Below, piece by piece: positions 4,331 through 36,220 of a stretch of 64,000 nt of DNA. The DNA lies in assembly GCF_001194135.2 (NCBI RefSeq), contig NC_068994.1, positions 8,671,448 to 8,735,447 on the forward strand. Direction: 5' to 3'. Made by a program: the position numbers and the translations under genes. The notes under the pieces are model-generated. The model worked only from the letters and a program-made list of their open reading frames with translations, made no database searches and had not been told where the DNA came from. Position 1 is the stretch's first letter. Every line of letters begins with the position of its first letter. The DNA is from Octopus bimaculoides. Lineage: Eukaryota.

Positions 4331-4690
4331 TGGACTAAACCTTTCATATCCCACCAAACAAATAGCAACACCGTACGTGGGTGAATACCTTCTTTAGCCT
4401 GGCGTGCCGGTGTTTCTCTTTTACCTACCTACAGTCCTCGGTGCTTGGCATTTTTATAAGAGAACCCATTTCTAGTCATCAGTCATTATTCGGTCCAAAA
4501 TAGGTTCATTCGTGAGAGGTGACAGCAAAGAAGAGCATATATTCATACTCTGCGCGCGATTAGACTTGGAAAACATGAGGAACCAAATATACTGACTTTT
4601 CCGATGGGACGAAAGTTTCGATGAATGGTTGAATGACCAAATCCAAGCTTCTTTGCTAGTTCCTCAACTGTTACTGATTATCATATGGGC
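4331..4690 (-). mobile_element. Mariner transposase remnant (pseudogene)
   Basis: Minus-strand translation with frameshifts and stops: TVEELAKKLGFGHSTIHRN...RAQSMNICSSLLSPLTNEPILDRIMTDD*KWVLY...GIHPRTVLLFVWWDMKGLVH. This carries the mariner HTH, the TGDEKW-like motif and the 'HPRKVLLSVWWD' motif. Confidence 0.9.
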
Positions 4691-5070: not shown

Positions 5071-5124
5071 GTATGCATACACACTTACATACACACACGC
5101 GCACACACATATATACAGATATAC

Positions 5125-5273
5125 GTGTGCCTGTGTGCTTATTTCAATATATGTGTGTGTGTGTGTGTGTGTTTATATATATCTATACATATGTTTATGT
5201 ATATATATGTATATATATATATATATGTACACACACATATATATGCACACATACACACAGACAAACACACACA

Positions 5274-5366
<93 letters not shown>

Positions 5367-5395
5367 GTGTATGCATATATGTAAATGTATATGAA
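5125..5395. repeat. Compound (TA)n/(CA)n/(TG)n microsatellite
   Basis: About 40 uninterrupted TG units at 5277-5360, flanked by TA and CA runs. Confidence 0.95.
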
Positions 5396-9045: not shown

Positions 9046-9077
9046 ATATTATTATTATTTCATTATTATTATCAATT

Positions 9078-9427
9078 AAGTGGCGAGCTTGGCAGAATTC
9101 GTTAGCACCCTGGACGAAATGTTTAGCGGTATTTCGCTCGTCGCTAAGTTCTGAGTTCAAATTCTGCCGAGGCCGTCTTTGGCCTTCATCCTTTCGGGGT
9201 CGATACGATCAACATAATCCCTTACAAAGGATTATTATTATTAATAATGAAGCGGGCTGGCAGAATCGTTAGCACGCTGGACGAAATGCTTAGCCGTATT
9301 TCACCGATCGCTACGTTCTGAGTTCAAATTCCTCTGAGGTCGACTTTGCCTTTCATCCTTTCGCAGTCGATAAATTGAGTTCCAGTTGCACACTGGAATT
9401 TCAGGCCTTGTTCCTAGAGTAGAAACG

Positions 9428-9463
<36 letters not shown>

Positions 9464-9840
9464 AATAATAAAATTATAATAATGTGGTGAGCTTGTTAAA
9501 TCGTTAGCACGATCGTTTCGGAGTGGATAGATTAAGTACCAGTGAAACACTGGCGTCGATAGAATCGAGTATACCCCTCCCAGTAAATTTCCTTGTGTCT
9601 ATCGTAGAAAAGACTACTACTACTACTACCATTAAGGCGTTGAGCTGGCAGAATCGTTAGCACGCCGGGCGAAGTACTTAGCGGTATTTTGTCTGTCTTT
9701 ACGTTCTGAGGTCAAATTCTGCCGAGGGCAAATTTGCCTTTCATCATTTCGGGTTCGATAAAATCAATTCTAGTTGAGTACTGGCATCGACGTAATCGAC
9801 TATCACCCTCCCTAAATTTCAACTCTTGTCCCTAAAGCAG
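9078..9840 (+). mobile_element. Four head-to-tail family A SINE copies (~9078-9215, 9250-9429, 9483-9612, 9634-9840) separated by (ATT)n/(CTA)n tails
   Basis: Repeated head GGCGAGCTGGCAGAATCGTTAGCACG, B box CTGAGTTCAAATTC, body GCCTTTCATCCTTTCGGGGTCGATA, tail GGCCTTGT.CCTAGAGTAGAAA. Confidence 0.9.
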
Positions 9841-10937
9841 ACATGATTATTTCCATTATATTAGTATTTCTTTTCTTTCTCTTACGGTTTATGAGAACCA
9901 TATTTCTTCAAACGTAAAGAGGATATATAAAACAACGCAGTCCTACCTATCCCTACAAACACGGTGTGGTCGTCACGTTTGGAATGAATATGGAGATGCG
10001 TCAGCTCAATCAGGTTTGACCTGCACCTAACCACGAGCAACAATGCCAACAACACTAAAGCAACATGAGAAACTTACACATATTACTCATATATATATCT
10101 CAGCGGCTACAGAGAAAACAAATCAAATGAAACGAAATTATTTACGAAAAATGGACTGTTGACCTTTTTATCTCTGGTAGCATGACTTGCTCTTCCGTCC
10201 CTTTTCGATCGACTGCAGACTTGAAAAATTCCTGACAATAATTTCTTCAATAAATATTTTACTAAGTGAGAGTGAATGTCAACTCATTTTAAATGATTCG
10301 ACAGCAGTTCCCATCATTGTTACATTAACTGATTTACAACACACGATTGCTTGACTCTGTGGTTGTTGATTTGTTGAGCTACGTCTAGCAATGAGATGAT
10401 TGGTTTACGTTTAGGTTGCTTAGTAAGATTGATTCATTGTTTTCACAAAAAAAAAAAGGGAATAATTTCTGCTTAATGATATTCTGTAAGCTAGAAGTAT
10501 TGCTGCTGAATAAATGATTAAATATTTGTAGGATTGCTAGAGTACTTTATATGCAGACTAATGCAAAACTATGCAACTATACGCAAACATGTTATTTTCT
10601 CTCTCTCTCTTCCAGGATTTTTCGCTATTTATTGTTCTTGTATAACCCGAGCCTGCCTTGATCAACCATTTCTTATGGTTCACACTCATCCACATTTTAA
10701 GAGAATCTAGAATCAGCAGATCTAATGTGTCTTTTCTAAGACAGCAGTATATGTAGTGATTCCGCTGGTATTGTAAAAATAAAATAAAATAAAATAGCAA
10801 TATGGCCTCAAAAAACGCTTGCTTCGTCATAATATTGATATATATTCCTGGTTGAAATGAAAATAGCAAACATTTCATATTGTCGAAACCCGATTTGACA
10901 TTCTAATTATTATTTTTCTTTAATATTAACATATTCT

Positions 10938-11550
10938 AAGGTGGCAGAGGGCAGAATCGTTAATGCATCACAAAAAATGGTTACCAGGATTTCAAAGGCG
11001 GCGAACTGGCAGAAACGTTAGAACGATGGGCGAAATGCTTAGCAGTATTTCGTTCTGAGTTCAAATTCCGCCGAGGTCGACTTTACCTTTCATCCTTTCT
11101 GGGTCGATAAATTAAGTACTAGTTACGCACTGGGGTCGATGTAATCGACTTAATCCCTTTGTCTGTCCTTGTTTGTCGCCTCTATGTTTAGCCCCTTGTG
11201 GGCAACAAAGAAATAAGAATTTCATTCGTTCTTACGTTCTGAGTTCAAATTCCGCCGAGGTTAACTTTACCATTTTCGGAGTTGAAAAATAAGCACCGTT
11301 TGAGCACTGAGGTCTATGTCATCAACTTATACCCCACCTAAAATTGGTGTCCTTATGCCACAATCTCACATATTGCAAAGTGGCAAGCTAGCAGAATCGG
11401 TTCCTCGCAGGGAAAATGCTGAGCAGTCTTACGACATTCTTTATGTTCTGAGTTCAAATACCACCGAGGGCATCTTGATTTTAAGTACCTGCTGATCATT
11501 GGAATTGGTGTAATCAATTTGCTCCCTCCCACGAAATTACACGGTTTATT
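10938..11550 (+). mobile_element. Nested family A SINE cluster (younger copy 10994-11217 inside an older copy, plus a third copy ~11377-11550)
   Basis: An old head at 10938 is interrupted after GGATTTC by a near-consensus copy ending TGGGCAACAAAGAAATAAGAA; the old body resumes at TTTCATTCGTTCTTACGTTCTGAGTTC. Confidence 0.85.
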
Positions 11551-12504: not shown

Positions 12505-13110
12505 GCTTGAATGTATTGACTTAAAAAATAACTCAGTGAGTCTTAGAAATTATAGAGCCTGTCATGGGAGGAAATTTACAAAATATCATTAAAATGAATG
12601 CTGCAAAAATGTATAATATTGTATAACATATAAATTACGAAAGAATATAAGAAATTTAATATAAAGCAAACAAGCAAACTAACGACGTCAAAAATAAAAT
12701 GAATCCGATTTATTTCATAGAAAATTACTGAAGATATATTTATAAATCTTCGCTTTTCAGCAAGGGAAAACGAAAAGGACCACTCTATACATATATCTAA
12801 ATATATAATATCATATTATATAATACATATTTATTCTTATATTATAAAACAAAGCATCGTCTTCGGAAAAAATAGAGACCATTATACAATTCAAGGAAAT
12901 AAGTTTTTACATTATAAATAAAGATAAGATTTTTTTTATTGTTCTCTAAAAGTACATATACATACCTCCATAAATATATACATGCATACACACACACACA
13001 TATACACACACACATACGCACACACATATATATATTCGTGCCGACATACATACACATATACATGCATATACACAGCCCTGTATAGACACTATACAAATGT
13101 AGATATATAC

Positions 13111-13160
<50 letters not shown>

Positions 13161-24269: not shown

Positions 24270-24874
24270 AAGGCAGACGGTCTGAAATTTGGGGGAGGGT
24301 GATAGTCAATTACATCAACCCCGATACTGAACAAGTACTTAATTTATCGACCACGAAAGTATGACAGGCAAAGCTGACCTCTGCGGAACTTGAAACCAGA
24401 ACGTAGTGACGAGCGAAATCTGCTAAACATTTCGTCCAGCGTGCTAACGATTCCTTTCTACTCTAGGCTCGAGGCCCGAAATTTTTGGGGAGGAGGCAGT
24501 TGATTAGATCGACCGCAGTATGCAACTGGTACTTAATTTATCGACACCGAAAGGCAAAATCGCCCTTGGCGGAATTTGAACTCAGAACGTAGCAGCAAAC
24601 GGAATACCGCTAAGCATTTCACCCGGCGTACTAACGTTTCTTATTTTTTTATTGCCCACAAGGGGCTAAACATAGAGGGGACAACCAAGGACAGACAAAA
24701 GGATTAAGTCGATGACATCGACCCCAGTGCGTAACTGGTACTTAATTTATTGACCCCGAAAGGATGAAAGGCAAAGTCGACCTCGGCGGAGTTTGAACTC
24801 AAAACGTAACTGCAGACGAAATACTGCTTAGCATTTCGCCCGGCGTGCTAACGTTTCTGCCAGCTCGCCGCCTT
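24270..24874 (-). mobile_element. Family A SINE dimer (24453-24874) followed by a third, older monomer (24270-24452)
   Basis: Minus-strand junction GGGCAATAAAAAAATAAGAAACGTTAGTACGCC matches the 13679-14108 dimer; second junction GAGTAGAAAGGAATCGTTAGCACGC. Confidence 0.9.
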
Positions 24875-24920
24875 GGGACGATACATATTAATGGAATGAT
24901 ATTGAGGGTTACCAATGTTT

Positions 24921-25055
24921 ACGTACCTAGGAAAAGAAGACAGGCGAACAGACGGCGAAAACCGAAGTAGTCAGCAAAATATTGTATGGTTCAGTTTGTT
25001 ACTTACCTATGAAATATAAAAGAAAGAATGAAAGAAAGATTAAAATTAGGGTTAA
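24921..25055 (-). promoter_or_regulatory. Recursive-splice-like site (AG|GTAAGT at 25007/25006) with an 80-nt RS-exon-like segment ending at AG|GTACGT (24927/24926)
   Basis: Minus strand: CCCTAAT (branch-like) - TCTTTCTTTCATTCTTTCTTTTATATTTCATAG|GTAAGT ... CTGTCTTCTTTTCCTAG|GTACGT; stop codons in all three frames of the 80 nt. Confidence 0.6.
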
Positions 25056-25489
25056 AATTGTGTTATTTTTACAAAACGCAGTAAATACTGAAAATTGCCA
25101 AAATGTTAAGTGAAAAAAAGAAAAACACGTAAAATAGAAGACACAAATATGTTGAAAAAACGAAGTAGCCAGAAGAATTGAAAAGAAACATCGTGGAGCA
25201 AAGTAGCAAAAAATAGATGTGACTTCTCAAGAAAGCAATGCAAATAAGTGTATTGGAAAGAGAAAAACACATTACCGACACCTATATGAGAAAGTTAAAA
25301 ATAAAAGGAGAGTTAAAATTAGAAACGAAAGTATTATAAAAAAATGTGCGGTGGTGCATCAGCATGGCCGCAGCTCTGAGCTGAAACTTTGAAATGAAAA
25401 ATACATTACAATACAATACAAGTTCATTACACATAATGCCAGATGAGAAAACAATTAGAAAATGTTACATACTCACACACACGCACATC

Positions 25490-25670
25490 TATCTATCTAT
25501 TTATCTATCTATGTATCTACCTAACTATTTCCCTATCTATCTATCTATCTCTCTATCGATTTCTCTGTCTATGTATCTATCTATCTATTTCCCTGTCTAT
25601 GTATCTATCTATCTATTTCCCTGTCTATGTATCTATCTATCTATTTCCCTGTCTATGTATGTATGTATCT
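25490..25670. repeat. (TATC)n-derived minisatellite, ~28-bp unit TTTCCCTGTCTATGTATCTATCTATCTA
   Basis: Unit repeated about 3-4 times. Confidence 0.85.
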
Positions 25671-26096
25671 ATGCACACACATATATGTGTGTGTAAGAGT
25701 GTATCAATAGATCGTTTTCATGTGTACGTACATGTACGTATGTATGTGTTGTTCACTGTGTGCATGTGTGTGTGTGTATGTGTATACACACTCGAGTAGA
25801 TATTTGAAGAAAAACATTTGAAAATATACATCTAAATATCTATTAAAACATATGTAAATAAATATTAAGATACACTACGTGAAACCGCAGTATATATACG
25901 GGGTAACAGAATTGAATATCTTTTAAAACTTCCTTTGTATGCATTAAAACATAAAAGAAGTACTTAACGACCCTTTGACTCCAAAACTGGAGCAGTTTAA
26001 GACTTCAGACATTCACAGTTATTCCTAGACGAGGATTTATAAGCACGCTGTTTCCATGTACACATCATCTGCAATTTCATGTCTTCCTTTTCAAGA

Positions 26097-28177: not shown

Positions 28178-29170
28178 CACTAGGTAACAAAAGTTTTGTT
28201 ACTATTAGACGAAATGGTGTTCATAGGTAATTTGGGAGCGCTGATTCCGAATCTGCAATCATTTTTGCTCTAGCACGTAACGTTTTTGCGCTGTTATTAC
28301 TATGCTGGTATCAAAATTACAACAATGTGAAAATTCATGACAGTAATCCTGACTTTTCGTTTGTTAAACCCAAGTCTCTAACTAAATCATTTAACCTAAG
28401 TTGACTTAACAATTGGGAAACATTTTTTGAAGATCCTGGTTCATCACAGTGATCTTCAGTATCACTCGGCACACCTTCAATTGAAGTAGATGCAATACTT
28501 TCTTCACTTAAACTATCTTTGTCAAAAGATAAAGAAGATTCTGGAATTGGAATATTTTCAGGAGCATGAACAACTGGTTTTAATGTTAGAGGGCAATCTG
28601 GATAAACAATCTTGGATTTGTTCTTCTTAGAGAAACCTGTGATGTTAGTTAAGCAGAAATAACAATCGATAGAGTGATTTATTGGTTCACGCCATATGAT
28701 TGGTACTGCAAATGGTATGCTTTACCGTTTACCATTCAGCCACTGGGTTAGTGCTATGTAGCAGATTTTGCAAGAAACATGAGGCACCCACAGTTTATCT
28801 TGGTCCCCAACTTTGCACCCAAATTAAATCTTGTACACATTTTAAAATTTCTTTGTAAGCTTATTTCTCTGATCTCTTGGCGTAAATTTTCCACACACGG
28901 AACAAAAGCTGTCCGGGTGATGACCACAAACTTTTCTGCTCATTATAAATACATACAGTAATAACTTAAATCAACACTCAAAGAAGCCTGTCAGTAAACT
29001 AAAATATAATATTAATCAACTGTAAATTTCTCAAAATAAAATCATTGAAATTATTATGGAATGTACTGAAGCTATGGCTATCAGGATACAATTTTTTCCA
29101 AGTCTAAATTTCAAATGTTGATCACTTTTTTAATAAGTAACGAAACTTACTGCTAAACTACTTTTCAAAA
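28178..29170 (-). mobile_element. Internally deleted Chapaev3-like (CMC superfamily) DNA transposon; transposase pseudogene 28943-28335
   Basis: MSRKVCGHHPDSFCSVCGKF...FGCKVGDQDKLWVPHVSCKICY...W.NGKR*SIPFAVPIIWREPINHSIDCYFCLTNITGF...LNDLVRDLGL with three internal stops. One terminus TTA|CACTAGGTAACAAAA fits CAC ends and a TWA TSD. The other end was not resolved; the subfamily name is recalled from knowledge of the family, not from a search. Confidence 0.75.
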
Positions 29171-29261: not shown

Positions 29262-29570
29262 TCGGTGGAGTTTGAACTCAGAACACAGCGACGGGGCGAA
29301 ATGCTGCTAAGGAATCTGCCAGCTCACCGCTTTAATCTACCCCAAAATAATCTTTTCTACTCTAGGCACAAGGCCCGAAAGTATTTTTTCTTTGGGGGGG
29401 GGGTCGATTAGATCGATCCCATTACGCAACTGGTACTTAATTTATCTATCCTGAAAGGATGAAAGGCAAAGTCGACCTCTGAGGAATTTGAACTCAGAAC
29501 ATAGCGACGGGGCGAAATACCACTAAGCATTTCGCCCGGTGTGCTAGCGATTCAGCCAGCTTGCTGCATT
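29262..29570 (-). mobile_element. Two family A SINEs: partial (29262-29333) and full-length (29353-29570) with ~19-bp TSD
   Basis: TAATCTACCCCAAAATAAT (29334-29352) and TAATCTATCCTAAAATAAT (29571-29589) flank the full copy. Confidence 0.85.
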
Positions 29571-29659
29571 AATCTATCCTAAAATAATGACAAAAATTCA
29601 AATCTCGCAGGGGGAAGACGAAAAAGAAAAAGGGAGGAAAAGAGAAGAGGTGGGGGAGT

Positions 29660-29842: not shown

Positions 29843-30570
29843 GCAGAGGAAAGAGTAGCGAGAAAGAAGGGAATGAGGTAGAGGAATAGTGATGAAGTTT
29901 TATTAATATGTAATCAAACACCTACGTGGTAAGCAAACGTCACTTGCTGTAAGTTCACACACGCGAATGTGAACATAACGGAACATTTAAAAGCAACAAC
30001 AACAATATTTACGAAAACAGAAAGCAAAAAAAAAAAAAAAAANNNNNNNNNNNNNNNNNNNNNNNNNNNNNNNNNNNNNNNNNNNNNNNNNNNNNNNNNN
30101 NNNNNNNNNNNNNNNNNNNNNNNNNNNNNNNNNNNNNNNNNNNNNNNNNNNNNNNNNNNNNNNNNNNNNNNNNNNNNNNNNNNNNNNNNNNNNNNNNNNN
30201 NNNNNNNNNNNNNNNNNNNNNNNNNNNNNNNNNNNNNNNNNNNNNNNNNNNNNNNNNNNNNNNNNNNNNNNNNNNNNNNNNNNNNNNNNNNNNNNNNNNN
30301 NNNNNNNNNNNNNNNNNNNNNNNNNNNNNNNNNNNNNNNNNNNNNNNNNNNNNNNNNNNNNNNNNNNNNNNNNNNNNNNNNNNNNNNNNNNNNNNNNNNN
30401 NNNNNNNNNNNNNNNNNNNNNNNNNNNNNNNNNNNNNNNNNNNNNNNNNNNNNNNNNNNNNNNNNNNNNNNNNNNNNNNNNNNNNNNNNNNNNNNTATAT
30501 ATATATATATATATATATGTGTATGTGTATATTACATATATATATATATATGTGTGTGTATGTGTATATT

Positions 30571-30613
<43 letters not shown>

Positions 30614-30678
30614 TGTGTGCGTGCATGTGTGTATGTATATATATATATATATCGATGTGTGCGTGTATATATATATAC

Positions 30679-30719
<41 letters not shown>

Positions 30720-31249
30720 TGTGTGTGTGTGTGTGTATGTATGTATATGTACATATACCTACACAGATGTACAGAATTGAAGGAATATATAAACAGATGA
30801 CCTACTAGATAACAAAGATCAAAAGATAACCACTATGAATAACGAATGAAAGCGGTTGATACTAAATATTTTGCAGGCTAAAAGTAATATAAATAAACGA
30901 TAATGTTTCCCCAATGAAAGAGACTGCGAAAATGAATGTGGTACAAGAGATAGGTGAGAAATTGGGTATATTTACTTGTAAATAAGTAAGTTAAAGATGA
31001 AAGACTAACCGGTATTTGTAAGAACAACTATTGATAGTAAACAGTTTGTATGATAATAAATATACAAATAAATAATGTTTTGGTGAATGAAAGACGTTGG
31101 AGTGACTAAAACATTAAAAAAAGCAGCTAGTGTCAGACCGAACGCTATATCGTTCGATTTGTATAGAAAAGGTATCTACGAAATTTCAGTGAAGTTGGTT
31201 CCTACAATCTTGAAAGTGAAGGAAACCTCACAGATGCTTGATTAACGTG

Positions 31250-33051: not shown

Positions 33052-33442
33052 CGTGAAAGGTGGTGAACTGGCAGAATCGTTAACTCGTCGGGCGAAATTC
33101 CAAGGGGTATTTCTTCTGCCGCATGGTTCTGAGTTCAAATTCCGCTGAGGTCGACTTCGCCTGTCATCATTTCGGGGTCGATAAATTAAGTACCAGTCAA
33201 GTATTGAAGTTAATGTGATCGACTTACCCCTCCCCACAAATTTCAGGCCTTGTAGCTTAAGCGGAAGGAATTATTAAAATTAGGTTAAAGTTGGCAGGCC
33301 GGCAGAAGCCTTAGCACGCCGGACGAAATTCCTAGCGGTATTTCATCTGCCGAAACAGTCGATAAAATAAGTACCAGTTGTGTAGAGGGGTCAATGTAAT
33401 CGACTATTCTCTTTCCCCAAATTCCAGGCCTTGTGCCTATAG
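33052..33442 (+). mobile_element. Two tandem family A SINEs with tail 2 (second internally deleted)
   Basis: AAGGTGGTGAACTGGCAGAATCG...CAGGCCTTGTAGC; GGCAGAAGCCTTAGCACGCCGG...CAGGCCTTGTGCCTATAG. Confidence 0.85.
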
Positions 33443-33777
33443 CTGAGCGTTTTAAAATTACGTCAATTTCCTTAAATTTAAAGAAGAAAAAATGAAATTT
33501 CAATAAAACTTCAGGTAAACTAAGCGCGGGCATATTATTGAATGAAATGTCAGTGATGATGTATATAAAACTGTAGGTGATATATATACAATATATACAC
33601 GTATGTACTACCCCCCTCACGCACGTATACACACACTCACACATGTAGATCTATGTATCTACACGTATTTGTTATATTGTTTCGCATACTGATGCTCACA
33701 ACGTAGTATTAATTCTAGATCAATTTCAGCTTAAGTATAGTTAATATTACAAGTTCCTATAATCTTAGTCTGCATTC

Positions 33778-34522: not shown

Positions 34523-34567
<45 letters not shown>

Positions 34568-34914
34568 CGTATCTATACATGTATATGTATATATGCATAT
34601 ATATATGTATATGTGTATATATATGTACGTATGTATATATGTATAAATGTATGTATGTATATATATATGTATATACATATGTATTTATATATGTGTGTGT
34701 GTATATAAGTATATATATGTAAGTATATATACGTATATATACATATATATACACCCCTATATATATGCATATATAATTGTGTATATATATATATATGTAG
34801 GAATATATGTAAGTATATATGTATATTATATATAGGATTATATGCATGTATATATATATATATATTATATAGGATTATATGTATATATATATATATATAT
34901 TATATAAACACACA

Positions 34915-34979
<65 letters not shown>

Positions 34980-35857: not shown

Positions 35858-35946
35858 CTGACAACTAATGACATGAAAGCTGCCTTTCCTCCAGTCGAGT
35901 CCTTACCAAGAACGGATACGAATGCATGAAGCTCTTCTGAAGACAT
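35858..35946 (-). CDS. Candidate first coding exon of an unidentified minus-strand gene (MSSEELHAFVSVLGKDSTGGKAAFMSLVV, phase 2)
   Basis: ATG at 35946 with G at -3 and an in-frame upstream TGA; 29 codons of non-repetitive sequence; perfect donor CAG|GTAAGT at 35858/35857. Confidence 0.45.
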
Positions 35947-36009
35947 ATCTGCTACGTTCAACGTTCAAGTTCCTTAACTTTTACGACTCTCACATAAAAG
36001 AGGTTGAAT

Positions 36010-36220
36010 ATTCCGCCGGAATTTACCCCACTTCATAGTCCCTTAATACGTTTTGCCGGATTAAATATGTTGCCAGAATTTACCACTAAGCTTTATGAAT
36101 CTTATTCGCTATTTATTTTAACATGAAATATAAAATATTCAATGTGAGAATTAGGTGTGACCAATACTACCAACCTAAAAAGGTCATATGTACTAACTAG
36201 TTTTCTCTCGCGGATAGTTT
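36010..36220 (-). promoter_or_regulatory. Candidate promoter upstream of the 35946 ATG
   Basis: Three copies of GCC(G/A)GA(A)TT at about 36014, 36054 and 36071, two extending to GCCRGAATTTACC; TCTCGCG at ~36206; CpG-containing patch in AT-rich context. Confidence 0.25.

What the first reader, a model, noticed from the sequence alone, without database searches (positions are those of the whole stretch)
24921..25055. Recursive-splice (ratchet)-type site with a poison RS-exon on the minus strand
Seen: minus strand reads CCCTAAT (branch-point-like), a ~30-nt pyrimidine tract, TAG, then immediately the perfect donor GTAAGT. Exactly 80 nt further on is a second pyrimidine tract with TAG|GTACGT. The 80-nt segment has stops in all frames; joined to the phase-2 exon at 35858 it reads AGG-TAA. 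Known: AG|GT ratchet points split long Drosophila introns, and vertebrate recursive sites are followed by PTC-containing RS-exons with a competing downstream 5' splice site. Inference: this may be recursive splicing in a long cephalopod intron, possibly two ratchet points in tandem. I am not aware of recursive splicing being characterised in molluscs.
Basis: partly seen in the sequence, partly recalled or inferred. Interest (0 to 1): 0.75.

Follow-up and report, generated by a model that had tools for sequence, protein, structure and literature searches.

The report
Unproven recursive-splice-like motif pair
Two back-to-back acceptor/donor splice-signal look-alikes lie 80 bases apart on the minus strand of a repeat-rich stretch with no detectable gene; they have the shape of a recursive splice site and are rarer than chance easily gives, but nothing shows this strand is transcribed or spliced.

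Summary
On the minus strand it reads CCCTAAT, a roughly 35-nt tract that is 83% pyrimidine, then TAG|GTAAGT with the G of GT at 25006. Eighty nt further on there is CTGAC, a second pyrimidine tract and TAG|GTACGT with the G at 24926. The 80-nt piece has stops in all three frames.

These are the two best composite acceptor+donor sites among the 260 AGGT in the window, counting both strands. Composition-preserving shuffles give about 0.1 such site per window and never gave an adjacent pair. The pair is not an 80-nt duplication.

Everything the interpretation needs beyond the motif is missing or untestable:
- The "phase-2 exon at 35858" has no protein homologue.
- No non-repeat ORF on either strand of the 64 kb matches any known protein.
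- No cephalopod DNA or RNA was reachable, so neither conservation nor transcription could be checked.

The first pyrimidine tract is a (CTTT)5 microsatellite remnant. Three SINE-like repeats begin 32-47 nt after the second site. Both acceptors are TAG and lack the fly TT at -5/-6.

My estimates are about 0.45 chance look-alike, 0.28 true recursive site, 0.12 ordinary unannotated exon and 0.12 relic. Interest is modest.

The parts
25045..25051 (-). Branch-point-like CCCTAAT (candidate A at 25046, 39 nt before the G of the AG at 25007). TTTTAAC and TTTTAAT nearby are equally good candidates.
   Evidence: motif match only. This motif is frequent in AT-rich DNA.
25009..25044 (-). Pyrimidine tract 1 (about 83% Y, interrupted by six A). 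Its core is a (CTTT)5 microsatellite remnant. The AG-free zone runs from 25087 to 25009.
   Evidence: TRF array 25019-25039, period 4
25001..25008 (-). Composite site 1, AG|GTAAGT (preceded by T at 25009). The acceptor AG is at 25008-25007 and the consensus donor GTAAGT at 25006-25001. Combined PWM score 13.2, rank 2 of 260.
24927..25006 (-). The 80-nt segment between the two junctions, with stops in all three frames and length 80 = 3n+2. It can be read as a cryptic RS-exon, as an ordinary non-coding exon, or as a minimal intron (GTAAGT...CTGAC...Y-tract-TAG).
24970..24974 (-). Branch-point-like CTGAC (A at 24971, 44 nt before the G of the AG at 24927)
   Evidence: motif match only
24929..24950 (-). 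Pyrimidine tract 2 (85% Y). It gives the strongest 3'ss-type score of all AGGT contexts in the window (8.2) and contains an 11-nt duplication.
   Evidence: TRF 24938-24959
24921..24928 (-). Composite site 2, AG|GTACGT (preceded by T at 24929). The donor has one mismatch to consensus at +4 and is weaker than site 1 (PWM 8.07 against 10.26). Combined score 14.7, rank 1 of 260.
24290..24889 (-). Context: three head-to-tail copies of a roughly 175-nt interspersed SINE-like repeat (at least 20 copies in the window). They begin 32-47 nt after the second donor.
25467..25698 (.). Context: a compound GATA/CTAT-type microsatellite that bounds the unique pyrimidine-rich block on the other side
35858..35946 (-). 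No protein homologue was found, so its status as an exon is unsupported.

Best explanation
Most likely this is a non-functional pair of splice-site look-alikes. A T-rich, about 570-nt unique island lies between a microsatellite and a cluster of SINE-like repeats. Part of the island is built from a (CTTT)n microsatellite remnant and a small local duplication. It happens to contain two TAG|GT(A/C... )GT junctions 80 nt apart. On this reading nothing is spliced here, either because the minus strand is not part of a pre-mRNA or because the sites are ignored decoys. Shown: the motifs exist, they are statistically unusual, and they are not a duplication. Inferred: that they have no function. That inference rests on the absence of any detectable gene, on the junk-like surroundings, and on the low prior for such motifs in large genomes.
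For: No gene context was found. The proposed upstream exon has no homologue in 5.8 billion clusters, no exact ORF on record, and only a chance hit to a bacterial FN3-repeat protein among 1.84 billion representatives. 80 minus-strand and 91 plus-strand non-repeat ORFs (>=41 and >=37 aa) gave no hit at E<=0.001. The minus-strand set gave none against PDB at E<=0.1. No Rfam family or tRNA was found. PPT1 is a (CTTT)5 array and PPT2 carries an 11-nt duplication, which are ordinary ways to make pyrimidine tracts. SINE-like copies were inserted 32-47 nt from site 2. Both acceptors are TAG with C at -5, whereas 99.5% of fly ratchet points have TT at -5/-6 (bioRxiv 10.1101/006163). In vertebrate-sized genomes RP-type motifs are no commoner on the sense strand of long introns than on the antisense strand (ratios 0.9-1.5, PMC2773006), so most matches there are chance. 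The apparent minus-strand excess of composite sites (23 of the top 30) drops to 19 of 30 after repeat masking.
Against: The two sites are the best two of 260 in the window and they are adjacent. Shuffles give 0.09-0.12 such sites per window, the second-best reached 13.2 in 0.7% of shuffles, no shuffle produced a pair, and 0 of 20,000 local shuffles gave two. No 80-nt duplication explains the pairing (34% identity at offset 80 once the motif columns are removed, against 30 +/- 4% background). The arrangement also matches several secondary features of real recursive sites: a downstream donor less than 100 nt away, a stronger ratchet-point donor, long AG-free zones and branch-point-like motifs. 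The gene screen is weak. It cannot see short exons, UTR exons or lncRNA exons, and it had no positive control.
Confidence: 0.45

Rival explanations
1. A genuine recursive splice site (ratchet point) with an 80-nt cryptic RS-exon in a long intron of a minus-strand gene. The exon-definition complex would recognise acceptor 1 (branch point at about 25046, PPT1, AG 25008-25007) together with the donor at 24926. The upstream exon would be ligated to 25006, which regenerates (C)AG|GTAAGT. This stronger donor would then outcompete GTACGT, so the 80 nt leave with the rest of the intron and the outcome is '0-nt'. If that step failed, an out-of-frame, stop-containing exon would be included. In a tandem variant the second AG|GT would also act as a ratchet point; I put that at about 0.08 of the total. 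Every step here is inferred from motifs.
For: The acceptor and donor are juxtaposed at AG|GT. A second donor lies 80 nt downstream, as at most fly and vertebrate RS sites (PMC6224609, PMC8605326). The ratchet-point donor scores 10.26 against 8.07 for the RS-exon donor. The segment is out of frame and full of stops. The pair is statistically rare. The site is 10.85 kb downstream of the strongest donor-like site in the window (35859), within the segment sizes seen in flies (2.6-63.6 kb, bioRxiv 10.1101/006163). Non-insect invertebrates such as sea urchin show an 8-fold sense-strand enrichment of RP motifs (PMC2773006).
Against: There is no evidence of a host gene or of minus-strand transcription. 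The acceptors are TAG, PPT1 is interrupted, and there is no TT at -5/-6. The strong PPT2-TAG in front of the second donor is not required by the model and stays a coincidence unless tandem ratchets exist. A SINE cluster sits right next to the site. Whether molluscs use recursive splicing at all is unknown.
Confidence: 0.28
2. An ordinary expressed exon of an unannotated transcript (5' UTR, lncRNA or alternative poison exon), 25006-24927, that uses acceptor 1 and the GTACGT donor. Its GTAAGT start would make it a 'putative RS-exon' in the sense of Blazquez et al. A much less likely mirror reading is that the 80 nt are a minimal intron (GTAAGT...CTGAC...TAG) inside a non-coding exon.
For: The flanks are the right shape for an exon: an acceptor with an AG-free zone and a usable donor. 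In humans 1.7-4.9% of annotated exons regenerate a 5' splice site at their start (PMC6224609). Non-coding exons would be invisible to every homology screen run here.
Against: The segment has no open frame. There is no transcript evidence. The exon would have to begin with a perfect donor and also end in a strong acceptor-like tract, which I estimate to be a rare combination. The sequence upstream of 25007 is T-rich, low-complexity and non-coding, which argues against the intron reading.
Confidence: 0.12
3. A relic: a fragment of a decayed gene copy or of a low-copy transposable element that once carried real splice sites, now inert.
For: The window is dominated by interspersed and tandem repeats and by degenerate ORF fragments that look TE-like. 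A relic would explain clustered splice signals without any present function.
Against: The 24890-25460 block has no second copy in the window. It shows no ORF similarity to anything, although only exact ORF look-ups were run for this block. The TE assignments elsewhere in the window are from memory and were not confirmed by Pfam or PDB.
Confidence: 0.12

Closest known systems
Drosophila intronic ratchet points with cryptic RS-exons (Ubx, kuz, Bx, luna; Hatton 1998, Burnette 2005, Duff 2015, Joseph 2018/2021, Pai 2018)
   Same: Both have a tandem acceptor|donor at AG|GTAAGT and a short, out-of-frame, stop-containing downstream segment closed by a weaker donor (80 nt here, about 50 nt typical). 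The distance from the candidate upstream donor (10.85 kb) is within the known range of segment sizes.
   Different: Fly sites sit in demonstrated introns longer than 11 kb, are ultraconserved, and are supported by junction reads, saw-tooth coverage and lariats. None of that is available here. Fly sites have TT at -5/-6 (99.5%) and mostly CAG; here both sites have T at -6, C at -5 and TAG. A second full acceptor|donor composite at the end of the RS-exon is not a described feature of fly sites.
Vertebrate recursive sites with RS-exons (Sibley 2015: about 10 high-confidence sites in long neuronal genes; Blazquez 2018)
   Same: The logic matches: exon definition of an RS-exon, then competition between the regenerated 5' splice site and the RS-exon 5' splice site, with the included exon carrying a premature stop. 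The setting is also a large, repeat-rich genome.
   Different: Vertebrate sites lie in known long genes and are conserved. In vertebrates the motif shows no sense-strand enrichment (PMC2773006), so a motif match alone has low predictive value there.
Pseudoexons / decoy splice sites in long introns and intergenic DNA
   Same: These are good-looking acceptor and donor pairs 50-200 nt apart with no open frame, often next to repeats and built from low-complexity pyrimidine tracts.
   Different: Ordinary pseudoexons do not usually begin with a perfect GTAAGT and also end in a strong acceptor-like tract. That combination is what makes this pair statistically unusual.

Membership tests
Recursive splice site / ratchet point | [quoted passage not shown] | tested here: met
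   Site 1 is TAG|GTAAGT (25008-25001) and site 2 is TAG|GTACGT (24928-21). They are ranks 2 and 1 of 260 AGGT by combined PWM.
Recursive splice site / ratchet point | Located on the sense strand inside a long (more than about 10 kb) intron of a transcribed gene | tested here: inconclusive
   No exon could be established on either strand. The candidate exon at 35946-35858 has no homologue. 171 non-repeat ORFs gave no hit and the 80 minus-strand ORFs gave none against PDB. The screen is blind to short or non-coding exons and had no positive control.
Recursive splice site / ratchet point | A downstream 5' splice site within about 100 nt that defines a cryptic RS-exon | tested here: met
   GTACGT lies 80 nt downstream with PWM 8.07. 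A donor of at least 8 falls in a 30-150 nt window by chance in about 8% of cases.
Recursive splice site / ratchet point | The ratchet-point donor is stronger than the RS-exon donor (splice-donor competition) | tested here: met
   The scores are 10.26 against 8.07 with a human-derived PWM. No octopus-specific matrix was available.
Recursive splice site / ratchet point | The RS-exon is out of frame and/or carries premature stops | tested here: met
   The segment is 80 nt (3n+2) with stops in all three frames. This has low diagnostic value in DNA of about 35% GC.
Recursive splice site / ratchet point | A prominent uninterrupted pyrimidine tract with TT at -5/-6 (fly hallmark, 196 of 197 sites) and usually CAG | tested here: not met
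   Both sites have T at -6, C at -5 and TAG, and PPT1 is interrupted by A residues (bioRxiv 10.1101/006163). The hallmark may be specific to flies.
Recursive splice site / ratchet point | Evolutionary conservation of the AG|GT core above its flanks | not testable with these tools
   No cephalopod DNA is held in the collections. A locus 24-mer and a 34-mer from the abundant repeat both gave 0 hits in the metagenome contigs.
Recursive splice site / ratchet point | Splicing intermediates: exon-to-RP junction reads, saw-tooth intronic coverage, recursive lariats | not testable with these tools
   No RNA data are available.
Ordinary cassette / poison exon | Presence in spliced transcripts; an open frame or a regulated NMD isoform | not testable with these tools
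   The flanking signals are present. There is no open frame and no transcript data.
Interspersed repeat / TE-derived sequence | Further copies of the same sequence elsewhere | tested here: not met
   The block 24890-25460 is unique within the window at word size 9 and E<=1. The rest of the genome could not be searched.

The most novel reading that the evidence does not exclude
The pair is a working recursive splice site in a long cephalopod intron, possibly with two ratchet points in tandem. That would be the first recursive splicing documented in a mollusc, or in any lophotrochozoan. The tandem form would be an arrangement not described in flies or vertebrates. I estimate the tandem form alone at about 0.08.
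Probability: 0.28. Interest if true: 0.6.

Novelty: new member of a known kind. Interest (0 to 1): 0.3.

Why it matters
Cephalopods independently evolved very large genomes with long neuronal genes. If this site were real, it would show that they remove long introns stepwise, as flies and vertebrates do. That would extend recursive splicing to a third major animal branch and give a first test locus. It would bear on whether the mechanism is ancestral to bilaterians or arises wherever introns grow long. If it is a look-alike, it mainly illustrates that a motif match, even a statistically unusual one, cannot stand in for RNA evidence.

Tried and rejected
1. Homology support for the 35946-35858 exon. 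The word-indexed search found nothing and the exact ORF is not on record. The full HMMER scan gave one hit (E = 3e-6) to a 3604-aa bacterial-type FN3-repeat protein, which I rejected as a repeat-driven chance match.
2. Exon screen of the whole window. Concatenated non-repeat ORFs gave no hits on either strand, and the minus-strand set gave none against PDB.
3. Positive control with TE-like ORF fragments against Pfam and PDB. This gave nothing. My TE labels therefore remain unverified, and the sensitivity of the exon screens for short fragments is unproven.
4. Reaching the locus through ORFs called on public assemblies. Ten local ORFs are not in the collection.
5. Cross-species or paralogous DNA. 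A locus 24-mer and a repeat 34-mer both gave 0 hits in the metagenome contigs.
6. Tandem duplication as the cause of the pair. A local alignment looked significant (35 against 20.8 +/- 3.8), but the signal is the motif itself. Offset-80 identity without the motif columns is at background, and TRF finds no 80-nt period.
7. Local T-richness as the sole cause. Rejected by the local shuffles.
8. Minus-strand excess of composite sites as a sign of the sense strand. It is not robust to repeat masking.
9. ncRNA or snoRNA as a marker of a host gene. There are no hits at gathering thresholds, and the sub-threshold hits all lie on microsatellites.
10. A CpG island or CpG depletion as a promoter or gene-body signal. 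CpG o/e is about 0.94 across the window and nothing is distinctive at 36 kb.
11. One literature query was badly formed and uninformative.

Full report
**Observation.**
- CCCTAAT lies at 25051-25045. It is followed by a roughly 36-nt tract that is 83% pyrimidine, then TAG|GTAAGT with the junction between 25007 and 25006.
- Exactly 80 nt later there is a CTGAC (24974-24970), a second tract that is 85% pyrimidine, and TAG|GTACGT with the junction between 24927 and 24926.
- The 80-nt segment has stop codons in all three frames.
- Fused to ...GTCAG at 35858 it reads AGG-TAA. This adds nothing, because the donor at 35858 is itself GTAAGT.

**Is it more than chance?**
- The octamer AGGTAAGT is not unusual. 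It occurs twice on each strand, against about 1.25 expected per strand from base composition (my hand calculation).
- The composite is unusual. I scored all 260 AGGT on both strands with a 3'ss matrix (-20..-3) plus a 5'ss matrix (+1..+6). The two sites rank first (24928, score 14.7) and second (25008, score 13.2). The only other site above 12 is at 19314 on the plus strand.
- Locally dinucleotide-preserving shuffles give 0.09-0.12 sites >=13 per window, and the second-best score reached 13.2 in 0.7% of shuffles.
- With a looser definition, shuffles give 0.6-0.8 sites per window and gave no same-strand pair within 150 nt in 900 trials.
- The 511-nt pyrimidine-rich block around the sites (66% Y) was shuffled on its own. 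It gives a site >=13 in 0.16% of trials and gave two in none of 20,000.
- The pair is not a tandem duplication. Without the motif columns, identity at offset 80 is 34% against a background of 30 +/- 4%, and TRF finds no 80-nt period.
- Three cautions apply. I chose the thresholds after seeing the sites. Shuffling destroys microsatellites, and PPT1 is a (CTTT)5 remnant while PPT2 holds an 11-nt duplication. The only real-sequence control is the rest of this window.
- Depending on which null is used, I put the chance of such a pair per 64-kb window between about 5e-5 and 5e-3.
- If only the published architecture is required (one composite site plus any decent donor 30-150 nt downstream), the downstream donor costs only about 8%. 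The whole arrangement is then expected in a few per cent of windows.

**Surroundings.**
- The sites sit in a roughly 570-nt unique island.
- Downstream on the minus strand, three head-to-tail copies of a roughly 175-nt interspersed repeat begin 32-47 nt after the second donor (24889-24290). The repeat has at least 20 copies in the window, in both orientations.
- Upstream lies a compound CTAT/GATA-type microsatellite (25467-25698).
- The window is 33% GC, has 20 assembly gaps totalling 4,924 N, and is full of TG/TA/CT microsatellites.
- I believe from memory that the repeat is the abundant octopus SINE. No tool confirmed the organism.

**Is there a gene for this to be an intron of?**
It carries the best donor score in the window (12.85).
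- Its peptide shares no words with any of 5.8 billion protein clusters, and the ORF is not on record.
- A full HMMER scan of 1.84 billion representatives returned only a 3604-aa FN3-repeat protein that matches through its repeats. I dismissed that hit.
- I then concatenated every non-repeat, non-low-complexity ORF: 80 on the minus strand (>=41 aa) and 91 on the plus strand (>=37 aa). Neither set gave a hit at E<=0.001, and the minus-strand set gave none against PDB at E<=0.1.
- Rfam and ARAGORN found nothing real. CpG o/e is about 0.94 throughout, with no island at 36 kb.
- A minus-strand excess of composite AG|GT sites (23 of the top 30; shuffle p about 0.003) falls to 19 of 30 after masking repeats.
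- The window therefore shows no detectable coding exon on either strand. This is compatible with a very long intron and equally with intergenic DNA.
- The screen cannot see short, UTR or lncRNA exons. My intended positive control failed: TE-like ORF fragments gave nothing against Pfam or PDB.

**How it would work if real.**
- The literature model is as follows (PMC8605326, PMC6224609, PMC6110457, bioRxiv 10.1101/006163). The acceptor of a ratchet point is recognised together with a donor less than 100 nt downstream, as a cryptic RS-exon. The upstream exon is ligated to the RS-exon, which regenerates a donor at the junction. That donor is usually the stronger of the two and wins, so the RS-exon is discarded with the rest of the intron.
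- This candidate fits the model in four ways. Acceptor and donor are juxtaposed. The RS-exon is 80 nt. The donor scores are 10.26 at the ratchet point and 8.07 at the RS-exon. The content is out of frame and full of stops.
- It departs from fly sites in having TAG acceptors with C at -5. In flies, 196 of 197 ratchet points have TT at -5/-6.
- The strong acceptor-like tract in front of the second donor is not required by the model.
- The same four signals can also be read as an ordinary 80-nt non-coding exon, or as a minimal 80-nt intron. By rough likelihoods both are less probable than either chance or recursion.

**Weighing the explanations.**
- In vertebrate-sized genomes RP motifs are about as common on the antisense strand of long introns as on the sense strand (ratios 0.9-1.5). 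In sea urchin and insects the ratio is 4- to more than 20-fold (PMC2773006).
- No mollusc has been examined, and no paper in the library treats recursive splicing in molluscs or cephalopods.
- The prior for octopus is therefore uncertain, no host gene was demonstrated, and the surroundings look like junk. Against that stands the real statistical oddity of the adjacent pair.
- My estimates are chance look-alike 0.45, genuine recursive site 0.28 (of which tandem ratchets about 0.08), ordinary unannotated exon or intron boundary 0.12, and relic of a decayed gene or TE 0.12.

**Verdict.** The interpretation cannot be decided with the tools at hand. If true, it would be a new member of a known kind (the first in a mollusc), not a new mechanism. 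The decisive data are the locus annotation, strand-specific total RNA-seq junction and lariat reads at 25006 and 24926, alignment to other octopus genomes, and a genome-wide sense/antisense count of the motif in long octopus introns.

Noticed in passing
window 24290-24889 (and about 20 further copies, e.g. 9061-9851, 10994-11345, 13669-15242, 29346-29573, 33056-33466, 37167-37351): A roughly 175-nt interspersed SINE-like repeat occurs in both orientations at 70-90% identity, including three head-to-tail copies right beside the finding. ARAGORN and Rfam do not recognise a tRNA head in it. Its identity as the octopus SINE is from memory only.
   Followed up: partly
window 35858-36084 (-): An ATG ORF of 29 codons ends in CAG|GTAAGT, the best donor score in the window. 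It is preceded by a 24-nt direct repeat 57 nt apart (36004-36027 and 36061-36084). It has no protein homologue, so it could be an unannotated first exon, another ratchet-like site (the upstream tract is 65% Y), or chance.
   Followed up: partly
window 25283 (-) and ORF 25281-25069 (-): A third pyrimidine-tract + TAG|GT (CATATAG|GTGTCG) lies 275 nt upstream of site 1. A 70-aa F/L-rich ORF starts exactly at it and stops 62 nt before 25007. This gives three TAGGT in a 511-nt block where shuffles give a mean of 0.73 AGGT. The ORF is probably a by-product of T-richness.
   Followed up: partly
window 19314 (+): CTCTCTCTCGCATCTAG|GTAATT is the only other composite acceptor/donor-like site scoring above 12. 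It is built on a CT microsatellite.
   Followed up: no
window 28338-28970 (-), 40638-41236 (+), 19448-20255 (+), 4546-4677 (-): These frame-shifted ORF fragments look, from memory, like transposon proteins: a CxxC/'WREPxNHxxDCYFC' N-terminal module, a Tc1/mariner-type transposase, and a LINE reverse-transcriptase C-terminus. Pfam and PDB sequence searches did not confirm any of them.
   Followed up: partly
whole window, e.g. 5089-5391, 13000-13200, 30507-30775, 34523-34959, 40219-40474: 147 sub-threshold Rfam matches (mir-297, mir-466, mir-3149 and others) all fall on TG/TA-type microsatellites. They are artefacts of low complexity, and none reaches its gathering score.
   Followed up: yes
whole window: The window has 20 runs of N totalling 4,924 nt, mostly inside microsatellites. 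CpG o/e is about 0.94, so CpG is not depleted. This indicates a draft, short-read-type assembly of apparently unmethylated DNA.
   Followed up: partly
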